Below are positions 5,201 through 62,210 of a stretch of DNA of 64,000 bases, piece by piece. The notes beneath the pieces were generated by a model. The model had not been told where the DNA came from. It made no database searches and worked only from the letters and a program-made list of their open reading frames with translations. Positions within the stretch are counted from its first letter, which is position 1; the number at the start of each line of letters is the position of its first letter. The position numbers and the translations under genes were made by a program. Source of the DNA: Mytilus californianus (lineage: Eukaryota); NCBI RefSeq assembly GCF_021869535.1, contig NW_026262734.1, positions 87,048,001 to 87,112,000 of the forward strand, in the 5' to 3' direction.

Positions 5201-5464
5201 TGAAACTATATTATCTCAAATTCATGGCATGGAACATTAAATACATGGCGGGGTTGATACTATTTGTGACAAGAACTGATGGTGTAATAGGACAAGACTG
5301 AAAATAAAAACTATATAAGAATGGAAAGTCATATAGTGCTCACATGATCATTTGGCAAGATTAGTTCATCTTTTTTGTAAAATATGCACTACGAACAACA
5401 AACCCGAATTATCCAAAATTATGTTGTTTTATTACACAATTACAGAGTTGACTATTGTGTACCT

Positions 5465-5691
5465 TTATTGGGGACATATGCAGTGATGGTGTGCTACATG
5501 AGGTTCACAAGGACACCCTACTGGACACGCTATCGTAGCATTATCTGGATGGCATTCAATTGGAATTTCGCAGAAACAGCAATTTGCAATTGGATTGTAA
5601 TAGTGACAGAGGGAATTTTCACCAACATGCTGACAAGTTCTGGTGCAGTCATCAGACTCTAAGTCGCACGGAATGCAACTAAGTGCAATGC
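5465..5691 (-). CDS. Exon 2 of a small secreted 14-Cys peptide (possibly a splice-defective allele or pseudogene)
   Basis: IALS-CIPCDLESDDCTRTCQHVGENSLCHYYNPIANCCFCEIPIECHPDNATIACPVGCPCEPHVAHHHCICPQ-TAA; polypyrimidine tract upstream but the in-phase acceptor reads TTTTACAA|GC, not CAG|GC; AATAAA at 5433-5428. Confidence 0.7.
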
Positions 5692-5875
5692 TTGTAAAAT
5701 GCAAAAAAAGGTATCGATGACATTGCTATCAGATATGAATCTAGACCATTGTTGGTATTTTAAAAAGAGATAGAATAGAATATTGTTTGGACGTTAGTTA
5801 TATTTTAAAAGAGGATTATAATTTAAATTTTTCCGTTCGAGTTTTTTGATGAACAAAAAGTTGCATTTGCTACAG

Positions 5876-6110
5876 GGGCCTCGGTGGTCAAATGGTCCAA
5901 GTAGTTCAACTACTATATCACTAGCCTGTCAACACTGAGGTTGTGAGTTCGAATCCCGCACGAGGCATGTGCGTCCGACTCCAATCCTAATTGACTAGGA
6001 TTGTCAGTTTTTCCTGTCGAATGTCGATGGTTCTCTCCAGCCCTCCGGCTCCTCCTCCAATAAAATCTGACCGCTACGAAATATCACAATAGTGGCGTTA
6101 AGCAATACAT
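5876..6110 (+). mobile_element. tRNA-derived SINE
   Basis: 5' GGGGCCTCGGTGGTCAAATGG (A box), GTTCGAATCCC (B box), body and AT-rich tail; reverse-strand fragment at about 16590-16640. Confidence 0.7.
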
Positions 6111-6429
6111 AAAGCAAATAAGCAATTAATTGATATAGATACGATACGAATTAGAATGTATATCCCCTAAACAACAACCCAACCACAATCAATGTATAGA
6201 CAATATGTCAAGATGTACATCGTTTGTTATAGACTTTTAAATAATATAAACAAATAGCAACATTTATTTATTTAAATAACAAAGCAAAACTATATGACAT
6301 AAGACAATTCAATCAATGACGATGATCCTGATTAGGACAGGTAATTGTTCAATAGACATTATAACATACAACACAATTGTGAAGGAAAATTCCTTGACTC
6401 TTAGATAACAGTATTAGTCATAAAAATGA

Positions 6430-6830
6430 ACAGTGTTGTCTTCAAATTTATCCGTAGTAAAACATCCTCAGAGATATTAAAGCAATATTAATACCTCAAC
6501 GTTCTTCATCATGTACCTATGACATTTTCCCTTCTAGATTGAAATGGAATAAATGAAAAAGAAACTGGATCACATTTCCCCTTATGAGTTTTCATGGTCG
6601 TGTATATTCAACATAGTAAGATAATAGTATTAGTGATAAAAAAAAATAGTGTTGTCTTCAAATTTATCCGTAGTAAATATCCTCAAAGATATTAAAGCAA
6701 AATCAACACCTCAAAGTTCTTCATCATGTACCTGTGACATTTTGTCTTCTAGATTGAAATGGAATAAATGAAACAGAAACTGGATCACATTTCCCCTAAT
6801 GAGTTTTCACGGTCGTGTATATTCAACATA
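6430..6830. repeat. Tandem duplication, two units of about 218 bp, inside the Cys-peptide intron
   Basis: AGTGTTGTCTTCAAATTTATCCGTAG...GTATATTCAACATAGT occurs at about 6433-6616 and 6648-6831. Confidence 0.9.
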
Positions 6831-7182
6831 GTTTTCGTCGTTTCAGTTCGGATAAGTAGAGATGTTTCGATTTGTTCCGAAACTTATGTTAATGGTGCAT
6901 GAAAATTTCCCTAGACAGTGTATTCTCTTCATTGAATATATCATGTTAAAAAACAAACAATTAACACATTAGATAAAATCATTCCGCTAATTGTTAACAT
7001 TTGTTTTCAAAATAAAAGTTTTTTAATTGTGTTGGATCTGACATGTACAAACATCAATATAAATGTTTTGCCATAAAAACGTACAGAAAGAAATGGTCTC
7101 CCAATATATCTAGACATATGCAATTAATATATAAATTGTACAATCAGGATTGATTTAACAAATACTGTCAATATTAACTTAC

Positions 7183-7225
7183 CATACAGACAGAGACATA
7201 TCACTCCAACAACAAAGGCTTTCAT
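7183..7225 (-). CDS. Exon 1 (signal peptide) of a small secreted Cys-rich peptide gene
   Basis: ATG AAA GCC...TAT G|GTAAGT = MKAFVVGVICLCLY + G; consensus donor, phase 1; TATA box 48 nt upstream. Confidence 0.7.
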
Positions 7226-7272
7226 ATTTAATGTTAATAAGATTTGTTTGTTTTGTTGCAACTTTTATTGTG

Positions 7273-7280
7273 TATTTATA
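7273..7280 (-). promoter_or_regulatory. Candidate TATA box of the Cys-rich peptide gene
   Basis: TATAAATA on the - strand, 48 nt upstream of the ATG at 7225. Confidence 0.5.
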
Positions 7281-8129
7281 CCAAATTATACATGGTTGCT
7301 TTTCAACGTAAGATGACAAATCGTCAAAGATCGATATAATTTTTACATAAATTCAATTCAAAAGCAATACATAGTTGTCGGGCATCAATCGTGACCAGGA
7401 TCTTCTGTAAAATCTATCGGTCCAACACAATTAATATTGCATGATGTTATGTAATCTTAACCACACATATAAAATGACGACATTTTTGAACAGTTATTTC
7501 CGTTTCGTAGAAACAAGTATCCGTTTTGTATGAACAATAAATAAACACTTCCCAAATAAGCCCAAGACGAGAAGGTAAAATTGACAATTTGACAGTCACC
7601 TTTAGAAATAATACATATATTATGAATTTGAGGTAGACGTGGTCAGAATATCACAATGATTTTTTTACGTATAATATGGAAAACTGATACAGACACTCAG
7701 CAATGCAGCATTTGGACGAGCCTTTTCTACCTAAATGTAGAACAATATTATTATTTTTTTTGTAACGATTAAGAGAAAACAATCTACACTATTTCGTCAT
7801 GTGTATTTGGGTGTAAGGTATGAGAAGTTTGTATCATAGCAGACAATTAAAGGCAGATACATTTCCGTTTTATATTTTTACTACAAAAATATTTATATTT
7901 TGTCATATTGAAGCATTTATAGAATCATATGCACGCTTACCTCATTTGTAATCAAATAATGGCATTTCACACTTATTCATATGTGTTAATTTTGATTGAT
8001 TGATATATAAACAACCGGTATTCAAATGGGTGCATCATTACGAGCCTACTTCTTTGGTACTCAAATGAAGCATAAGTCATACATAACCTTTTATAAGACA
8101 AATAAGAAAAGCATTGTCTTCCCAGTTAA

Positions 8130-13170: not shown

Positions 13171-16100
13171 TTGTTATGTTTAATTCAGATATATTTTAAT
13201 CATTTAAGAAGTACAACTTGTACATTGTATAAACTTTATCTTTTTAAACTTTGTTCTGGAAATTTTTGTTACGAAATATATATCTGTCCACTCCTTTAAA
13301 CTACACAGGATTTTGTTATCTTAGCTGTTGTATAAAATCACAGCTCGGTGATGGTTTCCAATTGATAAACACAAAAATAACATAACAATTCACCTGCCGT
13401 AACGAGGAGTTTTTTTGTGGTTAATATGTGTTTATATGTTCGAATATTTATAAACATGATAAACTACAAAAATCTCACTGTAGCAGATGAATCAGTGTTT
13501 TATATGTTATCATTCGCTTCAGTGGATTTAAAAAAAAAATGTAAATAAATTATATGTTTTAAAAGTCCTGTTCAGTATTACACTATACATGTACTTGTAT
13601 CATGGATGAGAAGTAGATTTATTTAAAGGTCAGTGATTTTATTATCAATTTATATTTTATGTCAAAAATACGAAAAGGGTTATTTGATGGTCTATAGCCA
13701 ACAAATGATGACATACATTGTTGTAATTTTGAACTATTCACAAAAGTTATACGGTATAAATTGTGTTTTTGATGAATATATATGACCACCTTGAGGTCAA
13801 CCCAATATGTAAGACAATCCCAAAAAGAGAAAGGATATTGCGTGAAGATAAAAAAAAAGCACTTAAAGTCCTAAACGACATATGCATGCATAGCAAATTT
13901 TGTGATATTGTGTGACAAAAGCGTTTTTTAAAATAAATCGGCTATTGTTATTATACAAAATTATGTGATTAATAGGAACAAGTTCTCCCATATTAATATT
14001 TTGAGGGGCAAAATCGCGGCATTTAAGAACAATGAAGATGTAAAACACTCACCATAAGATACAAAGCCCAGTCTTTGAATTTACTCGGCATTACCTATTT
14101 CGGTCAATGCGTCCGTCTGTCTGTAAGTTCGATGTTCTAGATAGCATGACGTAATGGTAAACTTGAAACTAACTATCAATATGCATTATGACTTTTAAAA
14201 AACATGCTTTTGCATATAAAAAAATTGGATAATGATTTTACAGTTCACTGAAAGTGCAACCGGGACGTTAGTTAGTTGTTCTATTGACACATATTTTGGT
14301 TTTTATGTTGATATACTGTTACATATCTGTCCAAGATTAGGGGAATTGAACGCTCACAAACAAGTTTTAAAGTGTTGACTTGCACTGAGGGTGATGCATG
14401 CAAAAGCAGGAGAGGCTTACCCTTTAAAAGTGATTTCTTATGCAGTTTTTGTGTGTTATTTTAATTTGTATCTTCTTGATCGATTAATAAAATCTGATCA
14501 TCGGTAAACCAGTTTTGTCTATTAAGTTTAATCCCGCCATATCCTGAGTTTGCCTGTCCCAAGCCATGAGTCGTCATGTCAGTGGTTGTCGATTGCTATT
14601 CGGTGACTTGTTCGTGTGGTTCTTAACATTCTTGCCCTTTGATTTTTATAGGACAATTATCTGATTGTCAATCATTCAACATCTCACATTTTTACTACAT
14701 ACAGTATCCGTGTAAAGCTTCTTACATCAATGTTTAGTTTAAGATCAAGCGACATGACTGATTTTATCAACAAACTAACCACAAACAATTCAAACATTAT
14801 AAAGAAGTGTCAAGTACAAACAACACTAATTATAAAAAGAAGATGTGGTATGATTGCCAATGAGACAACTCTCCACAATAGAGCAAATGACACAGAAATT
14901 AACAACTATCGGTCACCGTACGGCCTTCAATTTTGAGCAAAGCCCATACTGCATAGTCAGCTAAGTTTTTTTTTCTTTTTCAGAATTTAAAATACTCCTA
15001 CGTATTTAGAAAAAAATGGCAACTTTATATATCTTCATGTATAAATATATTAATCGAGGTTTTTGAGGTATTAAAGTAATGTTTTCTCAAACTCATTTGT
15101 ATGCATATACCTTTACGATTTCCAACAAAGATTTTAATATGTAACATTGAAGTGTTAATGTCACTTGATATTTAAAGATTTGAATATGTGTTTTTTTACC
15201 GCTCATACGAATCTAGTCCAAAATATTTTAAGTCGTGTTACGGTTATTTTATAACGAAAGGATGTTTTCAATTTTATACTTATATAATGTGCATGTTGGG
15301 AATTTTGTCAAATTATTCATGCTATTCATTAAATTCGAAGCTTGATTAATAGAATACAATCTCACAGATAACATAAATATACGCCCGTTAATCAATGAGT
15401 CCTGCTATGGTTTACCGTTCATCCGTTAGCTCACCAACTGTTCATGTATTGGTTGATTGTTTGTTCTTAGTCCAGTTGGAAATAGTTCAGACATATTCAC
15501 TATAAATTAACAATAATTGTAGGTAAAATCTGCTACACGTTTTGTGAGACATGAAATATGCTTTACTGATTTTAATGAAATTTGAACACAAGGAAAAATA
15601 AAATTTATATAAATTTTTTTTTTTTTTTTTTTTTTTTTGGCGATAGTCCGAGCAGTTTTTTGATATTGAAGTATTGCATTTATAACTTATTGATATTCTG
15701 ATATAATTAACCAACTTTTGGGAATAATTACCCATCCTTTGACGTAAAGAAAAATAACCCGGACTTATTTTAATGCCCGGAGATATGGAGATGAATTTTG
15801 GAACATTTGTCCATACTAATGACTTAGTAAACAGATTAAGTTTTCTTATTATTTCTTGTGATCCACATTTGTCATGAACATCTAATTTTATTATGATGAA
15901 GCTGTGAAAATTTACTGTGCGTATGGCTGTGAGTTGTTTTAATTCCACATTGGCTAGAGGTATAGGGAAAGGTTGAGATCTCACAACACATGTTTAAGCA
16001 CGCCGCAGTTTTTGCGCCTGTCCAAAGTCAGGAACCTTTGGCCTTTGTCAGTCTTTTGTGTCTTTTGGGTTTATTTAATTATTTCGGAGTTTAGTGTCAC

Positions 16101-37700: not shown

Positions 37701-40700
37701 TGTAAAGAAAAAGAAACGAAATTGTTGAAAAAAATAAGTTGATCAGACTTTTATTTTCTGCAGGATTGATCACATCATTATGTCGCCGTGTTCATGTTTC
37801 GACTGGTTTTCATGGAGTTATGTGCACAGATGTGAAAATAAGTAAACTATTGACAGAAATAGAGTACTTCTCCGAGGACGAATTCACCTACGCATTCCTG
37901 ATAGATGGTACTGGGAGAGCACTTATGCATCCTTTGTTACCAAATGCAGCTTTTGTCAAATCTACCGAAGATCCTGTTTTATTAGACATTAGTGTATTAG
38001 AAAGAGAAGAAAATTCAAAATCAGTCATTGAATCGATGAAAAGGTAGAATTGTTGTATAATTATATTTCACTCTATAAGTGGTGCTATATTCATTCCACC
38101 TTGTGCGGCCGTTCATCAAATACGTATTTCCGTCAACACTTTCTCGGGTACTACTCAATTCCCCATTTCCATTCTCAATTTTAATAGACAGAATGACATC
38201 ATAATTAATCAGAAGCATGAAGGTGGTAGGTTTAAGCGATTTAGTATTTTCGGATTTGTCAGACGCCGATTTACGGTTTGCTATTATTTTAAAATGTTCA
38301 TTGTGACGAATGAATTTTAATGTTGTCGTCACACTATTATAAAGTACTACAGAAGATTACGGCCTAACATTTAGTCACCAACTTAGTGATGAGTGTGGGT
38401 GCTTTCCTTATCTTTCACGACACCTACGTCTCATTTTGCCGATACTATAAGCTACACGGCGCGGGGGTTTGCTTAACAATGTGTGCATTCATTTTTATCT
38501 TCGTTAACGATTAGGTAAGGTTGATTAAAGATTATGTGATTGAATCTCCTTTGGTAGCCTGTGGAGAAGTCATATGCCTAACTGGACCTCCCCGTCTATT
38601 ATTCAAACTGATATGCGCGGAATGCATAAATACGTAGCCAAGTCAAGTCGAAAACTGCCTCATGTAGGGAAAAATGCTATTCTCTTATTAGATTGCCTGC
38701 TGTTTAAACATTTCTATTTTTAATCTTATTACATAGCCATTTCCTGTTGCACCCTGAATTTACCGGTAGACCAATTTTGCAAAAATCTATTTATTTTTTT
38801 GTTGTTTCATCTTTTTTTACCCTGATTGGCATAAAATGTTTCTCTCTTGACGCGTCATAAACAACAATCTTACAAGTAAGGTCGACATGATTGGAATATT
38901 TTTCAGTCTGATCAATCTTTTGAACGTTCGACACATAGATAAATTTTGCTCGTACAACGGACATCGTAGTAAGGTAGAACATGTTGTTTGATACTCATCA
39001 ATACATCACATAGAAAGGATATTTAGTGGTTATACAACAGATTTTTGTTTTTCAGAGGAGGAACTGGATCTAAATCTTTTGCAAAATTTTTCACCAAACC
39101 ACGTGGGACACTGGTAAATGACGGAAGTAGTGATATCAGTCGCCAAGCACATTTCTTTTGGGGACCAGTACGTATAGTATAATATTTGTCTATATTAAGT
39201 AGTGTTATTTCACTCTAGATACCGGTTTGTAATTAATTGATTGTACAGTGTCGAGCATGCCACTACTTTGTAAGGAAGACCACAGATGCAAATTATTAGA
39301 AAAAAAAGATGAAGTACAATACATAAGTAATACAAACGTTTAAACAATCGCGCATCACATGAAAATATAAGTTAGATAACTAGGTTTGAAAAAAAATCGA
39401 CACACACGATGTATTCGTGTTGAAGTGGTAATAATACGTCATCGTTTTTACTCCGAATGTTTAATTATGTAAATATAAATGTCAGGATTTTGTAATACAT
39501 TGGTTGTCGTTGGGTGTTGTCTTATGTGTGCTTATTGTTTTAATATCAATAAGGCCATTGTTTTGTTCATTTGAAATGATATTAATATTTCTTCGTTTTG
39601 CGTACATTTTAAGCCTTTACAGTAAGAGTTTTTCTCAATATTGAATACCGTACGTTGAAAAACTGTTTATTACACATTTTATTTAGTCTCTTGTAAATAG
39701 TAGTTTCATTGGCAATCATTCCACATCTGGCAATGCTTAATGTTCGCATGATTCAATTTCAGATACCAAACAGCAATTTTTCCGTATGCGTTGTTCTTGT
39801 GAACGAATCTTATGCCGAAATGACAGAATCTCAGTTTCCACTCAGTGACGCAGATTTTGACAACGTTTTTATGAACCACGATCGTAGTTTGCTTACTGAT
39901 TCATTTTCTAATTGTAAATTCTACAAGAGGAGGGTGACACTGGGTAGGTACCAGCTCAGTTTCAACGACACAATAATTATCCAGCATGCAATAAAAACTC
40001 ATGTACACGAAACACATATCCTGGAACACAAATATAACACATCGGATATTTTTTGGCAATTTGGATGCTTACCCTTCAACAGATTCATTGGCGCAGACTG
40101 AGAATGCACAATTTGCATTACAAACATCAATAAAAATAGCTCTAGTAATAAACGATTGAAAAAAACGATGCTTATTAAGGACCCTCTGGGATTCCACGTA
40201 TTTGTACAAGCAAATGTTTCAAAAGAATATGAAAAAAGCATTAGCAAAAATACCGAACTCCAAAGTTAATTAAAAATTGGGGAAATCCATAAAACATGAA
40301 AAATTAAAACCTTAAAGTATATCAACTAACGAAACGAATAGAAAACAAATGTCATATTCTCGACTTAGTACAGGCATTGTGGCAAAATGTGGATATCTCT
40401 TGATGTATTAACTGATGTATCATGTATTACTATGTATTGTTAAAAAAAAGTATATTTTTATTTCATTTTTCGAAATAGTTTTAATTTATTTTTCGAAGGC
40501 GGGTATTTCATTATTTTGATTTATGATTGTAACAACTATGGCATGCTATGTTCTATTTATCTTATAATATTTTTGTAATTAATTCCCTTTGACTCATTTA
40601 CCATTTCAGATAGAAGTTGTGTCAAGTTTTCACAAGCTGCCTTTGAGAACCCTTTTCAATATTTGGACCGTGACGAGACTGCGAGGGATATTAGTAAATA

Positions 40701-49700: not shown

Positions 49701-51393
49701 ATAACAGTACAACATAAGAACGAACTATACAAATCAGTTGAAAAAGACTTAACTCATCAGATGGATGCAATTAGAAATACATCTAACAAAAACACAGAGT
49801 TGACGTGGCCGGGTACTTGTACATTCCAGCAACAAAAAAACACTAAGTACAGATCTGAGCTCAAGCGTACTCGCAGTATCTGACAGCTAAACCAATATTG
49901 ACTTCTGTGTGTTTGTGTTCTTATTTATATGTTTCGGAGTTTAGTTTGACGTCCATTTTCACTGAACTAATACACATTTTTTTTTAGAGGCCAGCTAAAC
50001 CCGCCTCCGGGTGCGGGATTTTCTCGCTGTGTTGATGACCCATTGGTGGCCTTGGGCTGTTTAATGCTCTTTGGTATGGTTGTTGTGTCTTTGGCACATT
50101 CCCCATTTCCATTCTCAATTTTAATTTCCGTTATTTTTATCTGCTTTTCAACAATAAATATTGTAATAACTTAAATTCGAGGTAAAATCACAACTCAGAG
50201 TGTCGACGAAAACACATATAAGTCAAGTTAACCATAGCTCAATTGGACAACAATTTAACAATATAATTTTCTTAAATTGATCAAATATGGTTTTATTTAT
50301 GTATCATCTTTTCTGATAATATTTGGTTACACAGTTGAACATTTTTAAATTCCGTCTTTTTGATAAAGAGTCTAAGCGGTTTATACTTGATTTTCATATC
50401 CACTTCATATGTGCCTGTTTAATGCTAGTTATATTAATTCATTTTCATGTTGAATTGCTGTCCCTTCTTGCTGCTGATTACTGTCAGGTGTCCCGAACTG
50501 ATGTCCATAGAGGCGTTTCTCTCATAGGATGTTGTTTGGTTTTTTTCAGGGATCTCGAAGTTAATGATCATCAAAAATTCCAAACTGATATTGTAGATTT
50601 TACATCGGTATATGCAATGGTATTTTTATATACTTGACATCATATCGAAATCAAATAAAGATTTCTATTAGATATTTTAAAATATTCAATTTATATTTCT
50701 AAGAACACAACTGAATTCATATGTTATGTCTCAACTCAGAAAAAAAATGTTTTATTAACGAATCAGCGGCTTCATGTATGCGTTTTCTTAAATATGTTTC
50801 ACTGTGAAGGCGTTACAACTGTTTATGCTTGTCAAAAAGTACGGCTTTTCTCGGGTATCAGTTTTCTTCCCAGTTTTTCGATAAATCATGTTTCATACTA
50901 TGAAGTTGTAGCATCTCAGGCATACGATTTTATTATTGAAATCTAATAACTACGGTTATACATGTATGTGGTTGTGCAATAATTACCTTATTGCATTTTG
51001 CATTTCGATATATATTATATTTAACGAAAGATTTTCATTGTATATCATTTATTTTTTTTAGCACCGGTGACTACAACAACAGCAACAACCAAAGCACCAC
51101 CAATCACCGAATCTAGTAAAATGGCAGCAATAGTTGGTGGATCTATAGCTGCTGGAATATTAATCGTTCTTCTTGTATATGGAATAAGAAGATACTGTCA
51201 ATATTATCAGAAAACCCATGACAATGTCGACCCATATTTAAATGCTATTCCTGATAACCCAAATGAGCTTCATCAATTTTCAGAGAAGGATGAATTCAGT
51301 GGTAAAGATCGATATCCGCCTCCTTATCAGCGGGGACATAATCCAAACTTTTATGTTGATAATACGGGATTTACTGCTGAAAATGCTATATGA
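22611..51393 (+). CDS. CACHD1: VWA and Cache domain-containing membrane protein (CACHD1 / alpha-2-delta family), 23 coding exons, 1146 aa
   Basis: Exons joined by hand with GT-AG sites and matching phases: 22611-22745, 26051-26113, 27749-27922, 29061-29269, 30746-30911, 32722-32950, 34881-35006, 36493-36566, 37244-37388, 37764-38043, 39056-39167, 39763-39943, 40610-40746, 43112-43278, 43936-44046, 45030-45125, 45378-45489, 46530-46625, 47212-47349, 47768-47871, 48543-48662, 49129-49262, 51062-51393 (3441 nt, no internal stop). Signal peptide; WQHYSTTEGVSVIYP..FDPRF pre-VWA motif; VWA KDVVLVIDTSSSM and IILFISDG; Cache motifs PYVDPFSGVG, YAFLIDGTGRALMHP, PYVDAWGSG, IVDDSGFVVMHP; TM helix. Family is secure; strict orthology to CACHD1 is not (may be a lineage-specific paralogue). 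Confidence 0.9.
22681..23318 (+). repeat. Degenerate tandem array (8 units, about 75-90 bp) of the 3' half of exon 1 plus its splice donor
   Basis: ATGGCAATAAGTTGGCACAGGAACT..AAGAT.AAGGAAGATATTGG..AATTATATGCAGGTAAT repeated 7 more times into intron 1. Confidence 0.85.
26051..26113 (+). CDS. CACHD1-like exon 2
   Basis: tttatttcag|EQFNNFPYEIKSDTGNQLLER|gtaaga, phase 0-0. Confidence 0.8.
27749..27922 (+). CDS. CACHD1-like exon 3
   Basis: tgtag|IQLSLDTSLNDLNLVINDVNSK...RCCDLQDSALTYLPEFQSK|gtaagt, phase 0-0. Confidence 0.85.
29061..29269 (+). CDS. CACHD1-like exon 4 (pre-VWA region)
   Basis: ttttag|VDLNKACV...LWQHYSTTEGVSVIYPATKWHNCQNFDPRF|gtaaga, phase 0-2. Confidence 0.9.
30330..30700 (+). 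mobile_element. SINE-like repeat; inverted relative at about 26130-26515
   Basis: Shared CAAGGG(T)TGACTGGGG...CACGTCCGGTC block and a CAAT-repeat tail. Confidence 0.5.
30746..30911 (+). CDS. CACHD1-like exon 5 (VWA start, MIDAS DxSxS)
   Basis: gttag|SSYAAAASPTDKDVVLVIDTSSSMRQ...AANNVLQTLKPNDR|gtaggt, phase 2-0. Confidence 0.92.
32722..32950 (+). CDS. CACHD1-like exon 6 (VWA)
   Basis: tttttcag|VGIVRFDKNAY...ESNFANALFSAFNYYNSTDEDVQVENR|gtaagt, phase 0-1. Confidence 0.9.
33900..34035. mobile_element. Short hairpin-shaped MITE
   Basis: GGACTTT..GTTAAAAC.TTATATATGGACCTGTT mirrored by AACAGGTCCATATATAACGTTTTAAC..AAAGTCC. Confidence 0.55.
34881..35006 (+). CDS. CACHD1-like exon 7 (VWA)
   Basis: cttttcag|KIILFISDGMSSSGKNPVQVISDENSKYNNKITIFTYLIGQ|gtaaat, phase 1-1. 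Confidence 0.9.
35150..35330 (+). mobile_element. Hammerhead-bearing interspersed repeat with mutated core (35249-35290); further copies at about 28490-28630 (+), 42805-42985 (+), 24578-24619 (-), 25945-25995 (-), 11800-11850 (-)
   Basis: Shared block TACCTTAGCTGTATTTGG...CTCAATGCTCTTCAACTTCGTAC...GAGCGTCA(C/G)TGATGAGTC...GAAACGCGCGTCTGGCG. Confidence 0.75.
36493..36566 (+). CDS. CACHD1-like exon 8
   Basis: taatag|ESAKVQLQSMANQDLYNPSVGPKQ|gtaggt, phase 1-0. Confidence 0.82.
37244..37388 (+). CDS. CACHD1-like exon 9 (Cache)
   Basis: tttttag|IGHFEYFDQ...TFTVPYVDPFSGV|gtaggt, phase 0-1. Confidence 0.9.
37764..38043 (+). CDS. CACHD1-like exon 10 (Cache)
   Basis: ctgcag|LITSLCRRVHVSTGFHGVMCTDV...YAFLIDGTGRALMHP...SVIESMK|gtagaa, phase 1-2. 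Confidence 0.92.
39056..39167 (+). CDS. CACHD1-like exon 11
   Basis: ttttcag|GGTGSKSFAKFFTKPRGTLVNDGSSDISRQAHFFWGP|gtacgt, phase 2-0. Confidence 0.87.
39763..39943 (+). CDS. CACHD1-like exon 12
   Basis: tttcag|IPNSNFSVCVVLV...FSNCKFYKRRVTL|gtaggt, phase 0-1. Confidence 0.88.
40610..40746 (+). CDS. CACHD1-like exon 13
   Basis: catttcag|RSCVKFSQAAFENPFQYLDRDET...TNPGFH|gtaaat, phase 1-0. Confidence 0.88.
42362..42805 (+). mobile_element. Interspersed repeat family 2; copies at about 15945-16272 (+), 49893-50122 (+), 58283-58600 (-)
   Basis: ACATTGGCTAGAGGTA...GAAGACCCATTGGTGGCCTT...GACACATTCCCCATTTCCATTCTCAATTTT shared between copies. Confidence 0.8.
42902..42943 (+). ncRNA. Minimal type I hammerhead ribozyme, intact core (retrozyme/PLE-type repeat)
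   Basis: CGTCA-CTGAGGA-GTCttttgtaGAC-GAAA-CGCGCG-TC-TGGCG. Confidence 0.75.
43112..43278 (+). CDS. CACHD1-like exon 14
   Basis: tcttacag|STLRASVW...WRYIATKAGLIRVYPGVLLLKSYDHEKRA|gtaaac, phase 0-2. Confidence 0.9.
43936..44046 (+). CDS. CACHD1-like exon 15 (second Cache pair)
   Basis: ttgccag|WRQTMAHPDTMFLTTPYVDAWGSGIVLSFVHTIHKK|gtgatt, phase 2-2. Confidence 0.88.
45030..45125 (+). CDS. CACHD1-like exon 16
   Basis: tttgtag|SNIVTAAAGADFPLEYFNWFITSVYPSCGDN|gtaaaa, phase 2-2. Confidence 0.88.
45378..45489 (+). CDS. CACHD1-like exon 17
   Basis: atttaag|GYRCIIVDDSGFVVMHPRLKETTEESAFEEPKHITVE|gttaga, phase 2-0; a second in-frame acceptor (tacag) would start the exon at 45387. Confidence 0.85.
46530..46625 (+). 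CDS. CACHD1-like exon 18
   Basis: attacag|EPGIANILKREGVLNSKDCQDYSTNKDLWSYR|gtgagt, phase 0-0. Confidence 0.88.
47212..47349 (+). CDS. CACHD1-like exon 19
   Basis: cgaaag|VTVPSGKSSGLNFADTDNTFEIRPITDTNLFIIRSRSTPASSTCTC|gtaagt, phase 0-0. Confidence 0.85.
47768..47871 (+). CDS. CACHD1-like exon 20 (Cys-rich)
   Basis: atcatag|DGSKSPDVVECKNNCNCLCHSYIIYDVCANKYNT|gtaagt, phase 0-2. Confidence 0.87.
48543..48662 (+). CDS. CACHD1-like exon 21
   Basis: gtttag|SATLPCSARLPDTSGVSEPDVTDGLKACNVPTCHLKSTN|gtaggt, phase 2-2. Confidence 0.87.
49129..49262 (+). CDS. CACHD1-like exon 22 (Cys-rich, PSI-like)
   Basis: attttag|DCFSESECSWCEYTDIGEQIETPCCRLKEECTFGKTKSTKRDTC|gtatgt, phase 2-1. Confidence 0.88.
51062..51393 (+). 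CDS. CACHD1-like exon 23 (Thr-rich stalk, TM helix, cytoplasmic tail, stop)
   Basis: ttttttag|PVTTTTATTKAPP..AAIVGGSIAAGILIVLLVYGI RRY...YPPPY...ENAI-TGA, phase 1 in. Confidence 0.9.
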
Positions 51394-53883
51394 TCTAAAA
51401 ATCAAACAGATAATGCAAACTTTCGAATCTATTAGTAAAGATGTATGTACACTCAAAAATTCCATGATAGTTCTATACCATAACAAAATGTATTATATTC
51501 ATTATGTCATACACAGATATGTAATTTTACTAAAGTCTCTTTTATTTCAAATATATCATTTGTATTCTCTGTATATGTACATGTACACTATTGTCGATAT
51601 TACTCTTAATGCCAGCATTAGCTATTCGTATGCATAACTTTTCTTTTTAAATGTCACTTGCCTCATGACAGCGCTAAGTATATCTTCATTTGCACATTTA
51701 AAAACGTGGAATGTTGAGGTAAATTGATTGGTCAGCTCGAGCTTATTTGCACTATTCTCAATTTCGTCAATTTTTTAGAATGAAATTTAAATCATTTGTA
51801 TCTGATTGTAAAACTTTTATATCAATGCATGTCTGTAGATATGGATCAAAATAGTAATTTTTATTACTCTAGTAAGAAGAATGATATCATAACAAAAACT
51901 CCAATATATATTATCAACATAGTATACTGTTTTTATTAAATGGACGCATACATTTTATATGAAGCGACGAAACCCAAATGATCACTTACATGTAGGACAT
52001 CGAACAACTTTGACGATATTTCAATGCTAGATCATTACAACACTAAACCATTATCAAAATAAAACGGGAACGACATTACATTGATGTTTCCATAATCTAT
52101 TGTATAAATGTACCATGCATTTTGTGATTATTTTTTTGCTTTGCATTTCAAAATACGCTCAAGTTATAACTTCTCTATCAATAAGGATAAACTTCAGTAC
52201 TTAGATCCAAAATATGTGTGTTCTAACATGTCTAAACAATATTCTTAATTTTCATTTAAAAAGGTTGAACTTGTAAATGGACATGTTTTTAACTTTGCAT
52301 GCCCGTCCCCATCATTTCCAGAAATTCAATTACGATCTACATATCTGAGATGTTTCTCTTACAGTATGTTAATCTTTAGTGTGTAGCGGGCTTATATTTC
52401 CCCTTCATTCATCCCATTTCCGTTACACACCTGCATGTAATAAATGGCTACTACATAACAATTATCAATGTATAGTACTGTGTTTAAATCTCCTTATGAT
52501 CATTTCAATTTTATATCCATGTACTCTTTGTCCACCGCATTTTGTATCTGTACGAGACGTCAGGCTATCTTCGCCGTGTGTTGGTAGTTGGTGATTGTCT
52601 CTGTTTATGAGTATGTTGTTTCTTGTCGAGGAGTAGGTTGTTGGTGGTCGATCTATTATACTGTCCAATATTTTTGTTAATTCTTATTTTACTTTTTTTG
52701 TATTACTTATTTATGCTAACAATGTTTATTGAAAACAATAATTTACTCTATCTATTTATGTATGTCTTTTGTGGTGTTTTTATCTACTAAGAGTTGTTGT
52801 TACATTTACATAACATTCTTTCCATTTATTATTAGATAAGTTGTGATAATATATAAATCACAGTTTTTTACAAAATAAAAAGTATAAATGTCTCCTTTTT
52901 TACACTTCTGGGACTTTATGGTGGTACTGTTATAGCAAAATAAAAGAAGGACACACACTGTTGAGAATAATTGTTTTGAAATTATCAATGACGGTAAAAC
53001 ATACTTATAAAGTATCTAAAGTATTCAGTTTCTCGAATTCAGTTGTCTTCTGAAAATGCCTGTAAAAAGTTATGAATATGGCAGTTGTTTTTCATTTTTT
53101 CGGTTGATTGATAGCGTTTGATTTTGACAGTTTTTATGGACTTTCCCTTTTTGAGTTCGATATTTTTGTTATACTTTTGTACTGTCCATTTTTTTTTTTA
53201 TTCTTGTTTTACATTTTTTGTATTACTTATTTATGTTAACAATGTTTATTAAAAACAATATTTTAATCTTTCTATCTAAGGGAGATAATCGAACTTACTA
53301 ATGCTTCCCTAACTAATAGTATTGCCGGGTAGATGTACCCTGTTGTGAGTTCATTCGTTGTTCTTAATCTGTTTTTTATTAATTTTTCTCACTTTGTTTA
53401 AAAGGAAAGTAATAATTTTTCCGTCAAATTTTAGTCATCAATCATCAATTTACAATTTATACTAATATTACCTGCTCAATGTATTTTTTTTTTTTTTTTT
53501 TTTTGTGTATTTGTATATTTGGGATAATGTATGAATTATAAATGTATTCTTAATTTTATGATTTAATAATTTTTCGTCATGTTTTAATTAATAAGCGATT
53601 GACATTTAAAATGTACATCCTGTTTGATATGTATTCAACTTTAATTGTTAGATATTGCTTTAAAAAGTTTACTTTCATAAAAAGTTTAGAAAAAAATGAT
53701 ATTTTCAAACAGCCTAAATATTTTCCATCCAAGTAAGGCACCGACGATTCGTGGATCTTTTAGGGGGATTGGGTAGTTTTTGTATATGCATTGATTGGCA
53801 ACGTTCATTAAGGGATGATAATTATCGACCCTCAAATTCCACGAATTATAATATCACTAATAAAAGTAAACATCTTAGTCGTA

Positions 53884-61064: not shown

Positions 61065-62210
61065 ATGGCAGTAAATGAATTGCCCCCATGCAGACCAATT
61101 ATTTCTCAATGTAACTCTGTCACCGAAAGGGTTAGCAAATTTATTGATTACTTTTTGATACCTATAGTTAAAAGACAGACCAGTTACATTAGAAATAGTG
61201 GGGATTTCATAAATAAAATAGAAAGTTTATGGCCTGATCGGGATTGCCTTTTAATCTCTTTTGACTGCACCAGCATGTATACAAACATGGAGTTCAATGA
61301 ACTCATTTAATCTGTTGGACGGGCTTATAGCAGTGCAGTAATAGAAGATTATCCGATAAAATTACCTAGCTGTGAAACAATTAAATCGTTAGTAGCCACA
61401 GTGTTGAAAAACAATTATTTTGAATTTAATGACCGATACTTTGTACAGAAAATAGGCGCTAGTATGGGAAGTAAATGCAGCCAAGAAATTTGTTATATTA
61501 GAGCATTCGAAGTTATCAATGAAATTAGTAAAAAATATAAGTATAAAAATAAGATCTTATTTTACGGAAGGTATAGAGATGATGCGTTTATAATAGCTCA
61601 TTCATCACGAGAAGAGGTTGAGAAGGTTTTTTTTAAATAGCAAATGATCATCACCCTTTATTAAAGTTTACTTATGAAATTTCAAACGAAGAAATTATTT
61701 TTCTCGATACAGTCGTACATAAAGGGTTGAGGTTCAGGAACACCGGTATCCTTGATATAAAGAGCTACATCAAACCTACTAATACATTTCAATATTTAGA
61801 TGTATAACCTAACAGTCTTCTCTGCATTGATAAAAGGGGAAGCTATTCGCCACCACCGAAACAACAGCAACACAAAGAATTTAAAAGATACAATTTGTAA
61901 ATTCAAATGCCATCTTAAGCAAAGGGGATATAAGGAGCATGAAATACATCGTAACTGTGAATCGGCTCTCAATATCGAACGATCAGAGTTACGAAACTTT
62001 AAACAAGAATCTGACAAGCAGATACCACTAGTATTTGTAACTAAATATCACTTTTCGTTAGGAAATATAAATAAAGCTTTGCGAAAACATTATAAAAAAC
62101 TACTTCGCTATGCGAAATGTAGTGAGCTATTTCCAAAACCACCAATGGTGGCGTATAGTAGACATCGGAACTTAAAAGAAATACTGACCAGCTCGATAGT
62201 CAAAGCTTAG
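61065..62210 (+). mobile_element. Decayed Penelope-like retroelement RT (one stop, a frameshift and a deletion)
   Basis: PCRPIISQCNS..TERVSKFIDYFL, LLISFDCTSMYTN, KIGASMGS, GRYRDDAF, IKFTYE/IIFLDT, YIKPTNTFQYL, KGEAIR, PKPPMVAYSRHRNLKEIL are PLE RT and thumb motifs; TAA at 61308-61310, frameshift near 61637. Confidence 0.88.

What the first reader, a model, noticed from the sequence alone, without database searches (positions are those of the whole stretch)
5428..7280. Unannotated two-exon gene for an acidic, His-rich, 14-cysteine secreted peptide
Seen: on the - strand, a TATA box (7280-7273), a 43-nt signal-peptide exon ending in GTAAGT, a 1.49-kb phase-1 intron, a Cys-rich exon and AATAAA about 30 nt after the stop. 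Joined product is 89 aa, MKAFVVGVICLCLYGIALS followed by a 70-aa mature part with 14 Cys, 7 His, 9 Asp/Glu and 1 Arg; spacing C-x2-C-x6-C-x3-C-x8-C-x8-CC-x-C-x5-C-x8-C-x3-C-x-C-x8-C-x-C. Known: mussel defensins, mytilins and myticins are cationic with 6-8 Cys, so this does not fit them; the oyster I84 (cvSI) protease inhibitors are small and 12-Cys, but I recall a different spacing. Inference: a possibly undescribed family of secreted inhibitor, metal-binding or immune peptides. The ORF track misses exon 1 entirely.
Basis: partly seen in the sequence, partly recalled or inferred. Interest (0 to 1): 0.75.

Follow-up and report, generated by a model that had tools for sequence, protein, structure and literature searches.

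The report
Mussel 14-cysteine peptide gene, splice-damaged copy

Summary
Composition and Cys spacing are as stated.

The join 7183->5691 is not a canonical splice. The intron would end AA (5693-5692). The only AG lies one base further on, and using it with the GTAAGT donor shifts the frame and stops after 24 codons.

Three paralogs on the same chromosome share the architecture: TATAAATA, 55-56 nt, ATG, a 40-43-nt signal exon, a phase-1 intron and 14 Cys. All three have AG|G at that acceptor. The gene model is therefore right by homology, and the window copy carries a G->A splice-site mutation, confirmed in a second DNA sample.

Compared with the sister-species sequence it also has 6 non-synonymous and 2 synonymous changes, several at conserved residues. 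Paralog dN/dS of 0.13-0.5 shows a genuine coding family.

No relatives were found in Pfam, PDB, 1.84 billion protein representatives or fold searches. Function is unknown. One member is basic, so acidity is not a family trait.

Verdict: an undescribed lineage-restricted family; the window copy is probably a young pseudogene or null allele.

The parts
7273..7280 (-). TATAAATA box, 55 nt upstream of the ATG
   Evidence: The identical octamer lies 56 nt upstream of the ATG in all three paralogs.
7183..7225 (-). Coding part of exon 1: 43 nt, MKAFVVGVICLCLY plus the first base of a Gly codon (most of a signal peptide)
   Evidence: The paralog exon 1 peptides are MRIFVAVVICLCLY, MKLLLVGIVCVCLY and MHSLFIIVFFGIV, all phase 1.
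7177..7182 (-). Consensus 5' splice site GTAAGT (ATG|GTAAGT)
   Evidence: It is identical in L006 and L007, and GTCAGT in L008.
7183..7190 (-). Cryptic phase-2 donor CT|GTATGG, with the cut after 7188. It arises from the Leu codon CTG, which only this copy has.
   Evidence: joined to the AG at 5692-5691 it gives an in-frame 87-codon model. L006 has CTA and L007 has CTT at that codon, so they have no GT there.
5693..7182 (-). Intron as defined by homology (1490 nt), phase 1
6403..6832 (.). Two tandem copies of a 215-bp unit inside the intron
   Evidence: 91% matches.
5886..6090 (+). Very high-copy interspersed repeat inside the intron, tRNA-derived-SINE-like and antisense to the gene
   Evidence: table 2: summed contig depth exceeds 150,000 in the DNA runs, against 5-9 for the flanks, and RNA reads map only partly. 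ARAGORN finds no tRNA. The box-B-like GAGTTCGAATCCC is read from the reverse complement.
5692..5693 (-). Mutated 3' splice site: AA where all three paralogs have AG
   Evidence: Alignment A3. The same base is seen in an independent DNA sample of the same species (X3, table 3, row 5692).
5691..5692 (-). Displaced AG, one base downstream. Using it starts exon 2 at 5690 and shifts the frame relative to the GTAAGT donor.
5465..5691 (-). Coding exon 2 as defined by homology: GC + IALS + a 70-aa, 14-Cys peptide + TAA
5457..5464 (-). Donor-like AG|GTACAC directly after the stop codon
   Evidence: A4: AG|GTAAA in all three paralogs, with conservation ending there. X3 and X10 read A at 5459, which gives GTAAAC. 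The RNA contig of X13 ends at 5463 (table 8).
5464..5469 (-). AATAAA overlapping the stop codon (alternative poly(A) signal)
   Evidence: present in L006 and L007, absent in L008.
5428..5433 (-).
   Evidence: It is not conserved in the paralogs and is interrupted by a 1-base insertion in organism C (table 4).

Best explanation
The locus is one of four clustered paralogs of an unannotated gene family. All four lie on the minus strand within 378 kb of one chromosome, and the family is so far seen only in mussels.

Each gene is built the same way. A TATA-box promoter is followed by a tiny first coding exon that holds most of a signal peptide. A phase-1 intron of 1-2 kb follows. A second exon supplies the last residues of the signal peptide (G-I-A/V/S-L-S) and a roughly 70-residue peptide with 14 invariant cysteines, which probably form seven disulfides. 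The peptide also has a conserved CEIPIEC core and a C-terminal HHHC-x-CP motif. In three of the four members an N-glycosylation sequon lies at one conserved position.

The family product is therefore a secreted, disulfide-locked mini-protein. The invariant His triplet beside Cys makes extracellular metal or ligand binding my best guess for its chemistry, but this is inference only.

The window copy itself is most probably disabled. The last base of its intron has changed from G to A, which moves the AG one base downstream. Splicing from the strong GTAAGT donor would then yield a frameshifted 24-codon product. The copy has also replaced several family-conserved residues, as expected for a young pseudogene or null allele in a birth-and-death cluster.
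For: A real gene family:
- Four loci hit at E 1e-45 to 5e-9, with no stop codons. A profile search adds no further members.
- All four share the TATAAATA-to-ATG distance (55-56 nt), the exon 1 length (40-43 nt), the intron phase and the 14 Cys.
- dN/dS between paralogs is 0.13-0.52, with dS from 0.33 to saturation.

Damage to the window copy:
- The acceptor column is G in L006, L007 and L008, and A in the window (A3).
- No in-frame GT..AG model uses donor 7183 with an exon 2 start at 5691.
- The A at 5692 is confirmed in the DNA contig of a second sample (X3).
- Against the roughly 96% identical organism C sequence there are 6 non-synonymous and 2 synonymous differences. At 5 of the 6, organism C carries the residue found in at least two of the three paralogs (P-H before Cys-5 in all three; G-E before HHH in two; P in one).
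- No reads fall on either exon in the one raw RNA run of the same species (X21).

Transcription in a sister species: a 232-nt contig from an RNA-seq run (X13) covers 5689-5463 only, which is exon 2, with zero depth on the single-copy intron.

No known relatives.
Against: - Exon 2 is still fully open, all 14 Cys are intact, and the promoter, ATG and donor are intact. Any inactivation is recent, or the copy may still work.
- The window-specific Leu codon CTG creates a phase-2 donor (CT|GTATGG). Paired with the displaced AG it restores the frame as an 87-codon model, which could be compensation.
- The N:S ratio of 6:2 rests on very few changes and is not significantly different from purifying selection.
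- X21 was sampled at about 6% and its tissue is unknown, so the lack of reads is weak evidence.
- The organism C DNA contig shows T at the same acceptor base, at low depth (3.6). This is odd if that ortholog is functional and transcribed.
- The function is not tested at all.
Confidence: 0.55

Rival explanations
1. The copy is functional through compensatory splice-site use. The window-specific donor CT|GTATGG (exon 1 ends at 7188) joins the displaced acceptor AAG|C (exon 2 starts at 5690). This gives an in-frame 87-residue precursor that lacks only Tyr-Gly in the signal peptide.
For: - One search lists this canonical GT..AG model as in frame and open to the normal stop.
- The GT exists only because this copy uses CTG for Leu13, where L006 and L007 have CTA and CTT.
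- The exon 2 frame and all 14 Cys are intact.
Against: - A perfect ATG|GTAAGT donor lies 5 nt downstream and should dominate.
- GTATGG is a weaker site.
- No RNA evidence exists for any junction.
- Conserved residues have been replaced in this copy.
Confidence: 0.17
2. The intron is removed with a non-canonical GT..AA boundary (7183 joined to 5691), and the 89-residue precursor is made.
For: - This join reproduces exactly the exon phase and the Gly codon of all three paralogs.
- The organism C sequence also lacks G at this base, yet its exon 2 is found in an RNA library.
Against: - From general knowledge, non-AG acceptors are extremely rare in U2-type introns.
- An AG one base downstream would be chosen instead.
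- No junction read supports the join.
Confidence: 0.1
3. The AA acceptor is an assembly or sequencing error, or a rare allele of the sequenced individual, and the species normally carries an intact AG.
For: - Mussel genomes are highly heterozygous (general knowledge).
- The neighbouring difference at 5459 is private to the assembly, since X3 differs there.
- Runs of a second study (X5, X6) hold only half of the sampled words, so divergent haplotypes exist.
Against: An independent DNA sample (X3) has the same base at 5692, with depth 8.3 and no alternative (table 3). However, it comes from the same study as the probable source sample.
Confidence: 0.13
4. It is a chance open reading frame with no gene.
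For: No protein, Pfam or structural relatives were found outside this genome.
Against: - There are four paralogs with conserved promoter spacing, signal exon, intron phase and 14 Cys.
- dN/dS is well below 1.
- Exon 2 is present in an RNA library of a sister species.
Confidence: 0.01

Closest known systems
Mytimycins (Mytilida antifungal peptides; type I array has 14 Cys; PMC8004829)
   Same: - Restricted to mussels.
- Secreted, with a mature peptide of about 54-70 residues and up to 14 Cys.
- Multigene, with copy-number and presence/absence variation.
   Different: - The mytimycin type I array is CC-C-C-CC-C-CC-C-C-C-C-C. Here it is C-C-C-C-C-CC-C-C-C-C-C-C-C, with no leading CC and a single CC.
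- Mytimycin precursors carry a dibasic site and a C-terminal EF-hand pro-region. Here the stop comes three residues after the last Cys.
- Mytimycins have a non-coding exon 1.
- No sequence similarity was detected in any search.
Classical mussel cysteine-rich AMPs (defensins, mytilins, myticins) and MgCRP-I
   Same: - A small secreted Cys-rich peptide with the signal peptide on a separate small exon.
- A lineage-restricted, tandemly duplicated, fast-evolving family.
   Different: - Those families have 6-8 Cys, are cationic, and have pro-regions (general knowledge; PMC4558851 abstract for CRP-I).
- Here there are 14 Cys and no pro-region.
- Three of the four members are acidic (pI 5.0-5.4).
- No Pfam or fold match was found.
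Oyster cvSI serine-protease inhibitors (MEROPS I84)
   Different: - 14 Cys here, against 12.
- No hit to anything in a profile search of 1.84 billion representatives.
- I could not align directly to a cvSI sequence, because none was available by reference.
Other unannotated secreted Cys-rich peptide genes and birth-and-death clusters noted by this scan in the same genome (for example s1-302583, s1-333275)
   Same: - The same kind of object: small secreted Cys-rich peptide genes invisible to ORF tracks.
- They occur in clusters that mix working and dead copies.
   Different: A different Cys array (14 Cys). There is no WAP fold or other recognised fold.

Membership tests
Mytimycin | Cys array starting with CC and holding two or three CC doublets (types I-III) | tested here: not met
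   The array read was compared with Table 1 of PMC8004829. There is a single CC in the middle and no leading CC.
Mytimycin | C-terminal pro-region with a dibasic site and an EF-hand domain | tested here: not met
   A stop codon falls three residues after the last Cys in all four paralogs. Pfam finds no EF-hand.
CS-alpha-beta defensin / mytilin / myticin | 6-8 Cys, a cationic mature peptide, and a defensin-type fold or profile | tested here: not met
   - 14 Cys, and pI 4.97 in the window copy.
- No Pfam family at E<=10.
- The best fold matches are not significant: E>2 and Z<=2.6.
Macin (mytimacin) | Match to the Pfam Macin profile | tested here: not met
   hmmscan against Pfam-A returned 0 families at E<=10.
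MEROPS I84 (cvSI) | Sequence homology to cvSI-1/2/3 and a 12-Cys framework | tested here: inconclusive
   - 14 Cys, not 12.
- No true hit in the profile search of 1.84 billion representatives.
- I could not confirm that cvSI sequences are in that library, and I could not align to one directly.
Metallothionein | Cytosolic (no signal peptide), C-x-C / C-x-x-C clusters, essentially no His or aromatic residues | tested here: not met
   - A conserved hydrophobic signal exon is present.
- The peptide has 7 His and several Tyr/Phe.
- There is no Pfam hit.
Secretory-pathway peptide gene (generic) | N-terminal hydrophobic signal peptide with a small-residue cleavage motif | tested here: inconclusive
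   - Exon 1 peptides are more than 75% hydrophobic in all four paralogs. Exon 2 starts with I-A/V/S-L-S before the first Cys, giving small residues (Ala, Val or Ser) at -3 and Ser at -1.
- In three of the four members an NxS/T sequon lies at one conserved position; L008 has its sequon elsewhere.
- No signal-peptide predictor was available, and the joined sequence was not submitted anywhere.
Functional (intact) gene copy | Canonical GT..AG intron boundaries that keep the reading frame | tested here: not met
   The acceptor is AA in the window and AG in the three paralogs. The strong donor joined to the nearest AG is out of frame.

The most novel reading that the evidence does not exclude
The four genes define a previously undescribed, Mytilus-restricted class of secreted seven-disulfide peptides. 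The class has a conserved HHHC-x-CP metal-binding tail and both anionic and cationic members. It would act in host defence or in metal handling in byssus, shell or haemolymph. In this reading the window copy stays functional by a compensatory shift of its splice donor that matches the one-base shift of its acceptor.
Probability: 0.12. Interest if true: 0.6.

Novelty: new variant of a known kind. Interest (0 to 1): 0.42.

Why it matters
Mussels are known for large, lineage-restricted repertoires of secreted cysteine-rich peptides that evolve by tandem duplication, gene death and presence/absence variation. This locus adds a family that neither Pfam nor the protein collections searched contain. 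It has an unusual 14-Cys, His-rich framework and includes both acidic and basic members.

It also captures one copy apparently at the moment of inactivation: a single-base loss of the 3' splice site while the reading frame is still intact. If the peptides prove to bind metals or microbes, they would be a new scaffold for mussel immunity or biomaterial chemistry. If not, the locus is still a clean example of why ORF-based and homology-based annotation misses such genes.

Tried and rejected
1. Pfam scan of exon 2 at E<=10 found nothing.
2. PDB sequence search gave only chance rows, with E 0.34 and 1.2.
3. The word-index protein search found no candidate.
4. The profile search of 1.84 billion representatives gave a single hit, P0001. 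It is a translated tandem repeat matched in five short stretches, so I rejected it as spurious.
5. The ESM Atlas feature search had a best score of 0.77 to a TILa/FOLN cluster, below any useful threshold.
6. The AlphaFold2 model of the intact paralog L006 had pLDDT 73.8 for the best model and about 52 for the other four.
   - Foldseek against PDB gave no match at E<=0.001.
   - VIA-align wide gave a best Z of 2.6, to Evasin-3.
   - The atlas fold search gave TM<0.5.
   - No fold was assigned.
7. Exact-product look-ups of exon 2 of the window copy and of L006 in public assemblies found nothing on record.
8. A search for a shared third exon downstream of the four paralogs by blastn gave no block common to all.
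9. ARAGORN on the intron repeat found no tRNA.
10. Earlier notes of this scan had nothing at this place.
11. A chance ORF, mytimycin membership and metallothionein were considered and rejected (see membership tests).

Joins were only enumerated in a local script to check reading frames. SignalP was not available.
Full report
**1. The observation**

On the minus strand the window reads as follows:
- TATAAATA at 7280-7273.
- ATG at 7225-7223.
- 43 coding bases (MKAFVVGVICLCLY plus a G) up to 7183.
- A perfect donor, ATG|GTAAGT.

About 1.5 kb further on, an open frame runs from 5725 to a TAA at 5467-5465. The 70 residues from the first Cys hold 14 Cys, 7 His, 9 Asp/Glu and 1 Arg, with pI 4.97. 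The spacing is C-x2-C-x6-C-x3-C-x8-C-x8-CC-x-C-x5-C-x8-C-x3-C-x-C-x8-C-x-C. AATAAA lies at 5433-5428, 31 nt after the stop. All of this is confirmed.

**2. The splice is not as written**

Exon 1 ends in phase 1, so exon 2 must contribute two bases (GC) to the Gly codon and start at 5691. The two bases before 5691 are 5693-5692 = AA.

The only AG here is 5692-5691, which starts exon 2 at 5690. Joined to the GTAAGT donor this is out of frame. The reading becomes ...LCLY-ALHLVAFRAT-stop, 24 codons (direct reading).

A local enumeration of every GT..AG pair that keeps the frame open gives no 7183/5691 model. With the acceptor at 5690, only two weaker donors restore the frame:
- CT|GTATGG, with the cut after 7188, giving 87 codons.
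- AA|GTTAAT, with the cut after 7179, giving 90 codons.

**3. Paralogs show what the gene should look like**

A six-frame search of the window's own genome (1.65 Gb in 175 contigs) with exon 2 finds three more copies on the same chromosome, all on the minus strand. They lie 91 kb, 358 kb and 376 kb away, at E 9.5e-30, 4.6e-23 and 5.3e-9, with no stops. A profile of the four finds no further member.

I fetched 10 kb around each copy (L006, L007, L008). All four genes share the following:
- TATAAATA 55-56 nt upstream of the ATG.
- A 40-43-nt coding exon 1 that is more than 75% hydrophobic: MRIFVAVVICLCLY, MKLLLVGIVCVCLY and MHSLFIIVFFGIV.
- A phase-1 GT(A/C)AGT donor.
- A 1-2 kb intron.
- An exon 2 beginning G(C/T)-ATT, that is (G)-I-A/V/S-L-S-C.
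- 14 Cys with almost identical spacing.

The invariant motifs are CEIPIEC (CEVPIEC in L007), HHHC-x-CP, a P-H pair before the fifth Cys, and the CC-x-C.

Nei-Gojobori dN/dS between paralogs is 0.13-0.52, with dS from 0.33 to saturation. This is an old coding family under purifying selection, not a chance ORF.

Three members are acidic (pI 5.0-5.4). L008 has 11 Lys/Arg and a pI of 8.4, so acidity is not a family character. In three of the four members an NxS/T sequon lies at one conserved position; L008 has its sequon elsewhere. This fits passage through the secretory pathway.

**4. The window copy has a damaged acceptor**

In the alignment of the intron/exon 2 boundary (A3), L006, L007 and L008 read ...CAG|GC...CAG|GC and ...TAG|GT. 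The window reads ...CAA|GC.

The base is not an assembly slip as far as I can tell. The contig of an independent DNA sample of the same species (X3) covers 5350-5928 and shows no alternative at 5692, at depth 8.3 (tables 3 and 8). That sample comes from the same study as the probable source, so population frequency is unknown.

**5. Further signs of relaxed constraint**

Two runs of a related species share one haplotype about 96% identical to the window across exon 2. X10 is labelled organism C and behaves as DNA, because its contig runs through the acceptor into the intron. X13 is RNA-seq labelled 'mollusc metagenome'.

Translating the eight shared differences gives 6 non-synonymous and 2 synonymous changes (dN/dS 0.73). 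At five of the six non-synonymous sites the related species carries the residue found in at least two of the three paralogs: P-H before Cys-5 in all three, G-E before HHH in two, and P after TR/K in one. The replacements therefore happened on the window's lineage.

The numbers are small. The pattern is what neutral decay would give and differs from the family-wide ratio.

One observation remains unexplained. The X10 contig shows T at 5692 (minus strand), again not G, at depth 3.6. Either the acceptor was already lost before the two species split, or the base is polymorphic, or this is a low-depth error.

**6. Expression**

The only raw-read RNA run of the same species (X21, about 6% sampled, tissue unknown) put no read on either exon. 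All 880 laid reads belong to the intron repeat. This is weak negative evidence.

In X13, a genuine RNA-seq library, a 232-nt contig covers 5689-5463 and nothing else. It has zero depth on the single-copy intron and downstream sequence (tables 2 and 8). The contig spans exon 2 almost exactly, from the acceptor to the AG after the stop codon. This suggests a processed transcript in the sister species, but a contig cannot prove a junction.

Six further small runs of organism C, from five further studies, hold the same share of words as X13 (0.25); a seventh, X10, holds 0.31. Their RNA label is a guess. Read laying and the look-up of sequencing runs are capped at one call each, so I could not test the paralogs.

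**7. The 3' end**

What is conserved is the sequence straight after the stop: TAA/TAG-AG|GTAAA in L006, L007 and L008, after which similarity collapses. The window has GTACAC, but X3 and X10 read A at 5459, which gives GTAAAC.

There are two readings:
- A splice donor opening a 3'-UTR intron, consistent with the X13 contig ending at 5463.
- The AATAAA that overlaps the stop codon in three of the four genes, serving as the poly(A) signal.

blastn found no third exon shared by all paralogs. This is left open.

**8. What it is related to**

Nothing detectable:
- Pfam: 0 families at E<=10.
- PDB sequences: only chance rows.
- Word-index search of 5.8 billion clusters: no candidate.
- HMMER profile search of 1.84 billion representatives: one hit, a 963-aa translated tandem repeat matched in five short pieces, which I reject as spurious.
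- ESM Atlas features: best score 0.77.

An AlphaFold2 model of the intact paralog L006, built on a four-sequence alignment, reached pLDDT 73.8 in one model and about 52 in the other four. It is mostly beta-hairpins. Searches with it gave the following:
- Foldseek against PDB: best E 2.6.
- VIA-align wide: best Z 2.6.
- Atlas fold search: TM<0.5.

With such a shallow alignment the model is not trustworthy, so 'no known fold' is not a claim I make.

The only mussel peptides with 14 Cys that I found in the literature are type I mytimycins. Their array is CC-C-C-CC-C-CC-C-C-C-C-C and their precursors carry a C-terminal EF-hand pro-region (PMC8004829). Neither holds here.

Other agents' notes on this genome call it the California mussel. 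The assembly size and contig count match my memory of that assembly, but I did not verify the species. Those notes also show that unannotated secreted Cys-rich peptide genes, including clusters with dead copies, are common in this genome.

**9. How it most likely works**

Shown here:
- A TATA-driven, two-coding-exon gene family.
- An N-terminal hydrophobic leader split by a phase-1 intron.
- 14 invariant Cys.
- Purifying selection across the family.
- A tandem cluster of four genes.

Inferred:
- The leader is cleaved after (I)-A/V/S-L-S. The -3/-1 rule fits, but no predictor was run.
- The 14 Cys form seven disulfides in an extracellular mini-protein.
- The invariant His triplet next to two Cys, and the conserved acidic and His positions, suggest binding of a divalent metal or another ligand. 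A membrane-disruptive action is less likely, at least for the three acidic members. The basic L008 could act differently.
- For the window copy, splicing from GTAAGT to the displaced AG gives a frameshift and early stop, so no peptide is made.

My odds for the window copy are:

| Reading | Probability |
|---|---|
| Disabled (pseudogene or null allele) | about 0.55 |
| Rescued by the cryptic phase-2 donor | about 0.17 |
| AA is a rare allele or an error | about 0.13 |
| Non-canonical AA acceptor used | about 0.10 |

**10. Verdict**

The family appears undescribed and lineage-restricted, which is of moderate interest. It is of a kind well known in mussels, and many similar cases have turned up in this same genome. 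The window copy is probably the defective member.

Noticed in passing
window 5886-6090 (+ strand, inside the intron): An extremely high-copy interspersed repeat with a tRNA-like box-B motif, probably a tRNA-derived SINE. Summed contig depth exceeds 150,000 in the DNA runs, against 5-9 in the flanks. Many partial RNA reads hit it in the raw RNA run. ARAGORN calls no tRNA.
   Followed up: partly
window 6403-6832: Two tandem copies of a 215-bp unit (91% identical) within the intron.
   Followed up: no
window 5457-5464; L006:2802-2809; L007:2700-2707; L008:2760-2767 (approximate): The donor-like motif AG|GTAAA directly after the stop codon is conserved in all paralogs, while the sequence beyond it diverges. 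This suggests a 3'-UTR intron, or a constraint linked to the AATAAA that overlaps the stop. The window haplotype alone has GTACAC; X3 and X10 read GTAAAC.
   Followed up: partly
L008:2768-2986 (-), exon 1 ATG at L008:5110: The most divergent paralog is strongly basic (11 Lys/Arg, pI 8.4) while keeping all 14 Cys. A charge switch within one small family could mean functional divergence, for example towards an antimicrobial-type member.
   Followed up: no
window 5692 in run X10 (organism C): The related species shows T (minus strand) at the very base that is A in the window and G in all paralogs. That makes two different non-G states at an essential splice base, in a low-depth contig (3.6). Unexplained.
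   Followed up: no
window 7159-7330: None of the four runs, including the DNA run X3 of the same species, laid any contig on exon 1 and the promoter (table 2). The tool warns that holes prove nothing, but presence/absence variation of this segment was not excluded.
   Followed up: no
window 1-64000: The window is otherwise poor in long open frames. Only four ORFs reach 130 aa: 15487-15984, 39709-40101, 51242-51637 and 61800-62210. None was examined.
   Followed up: no
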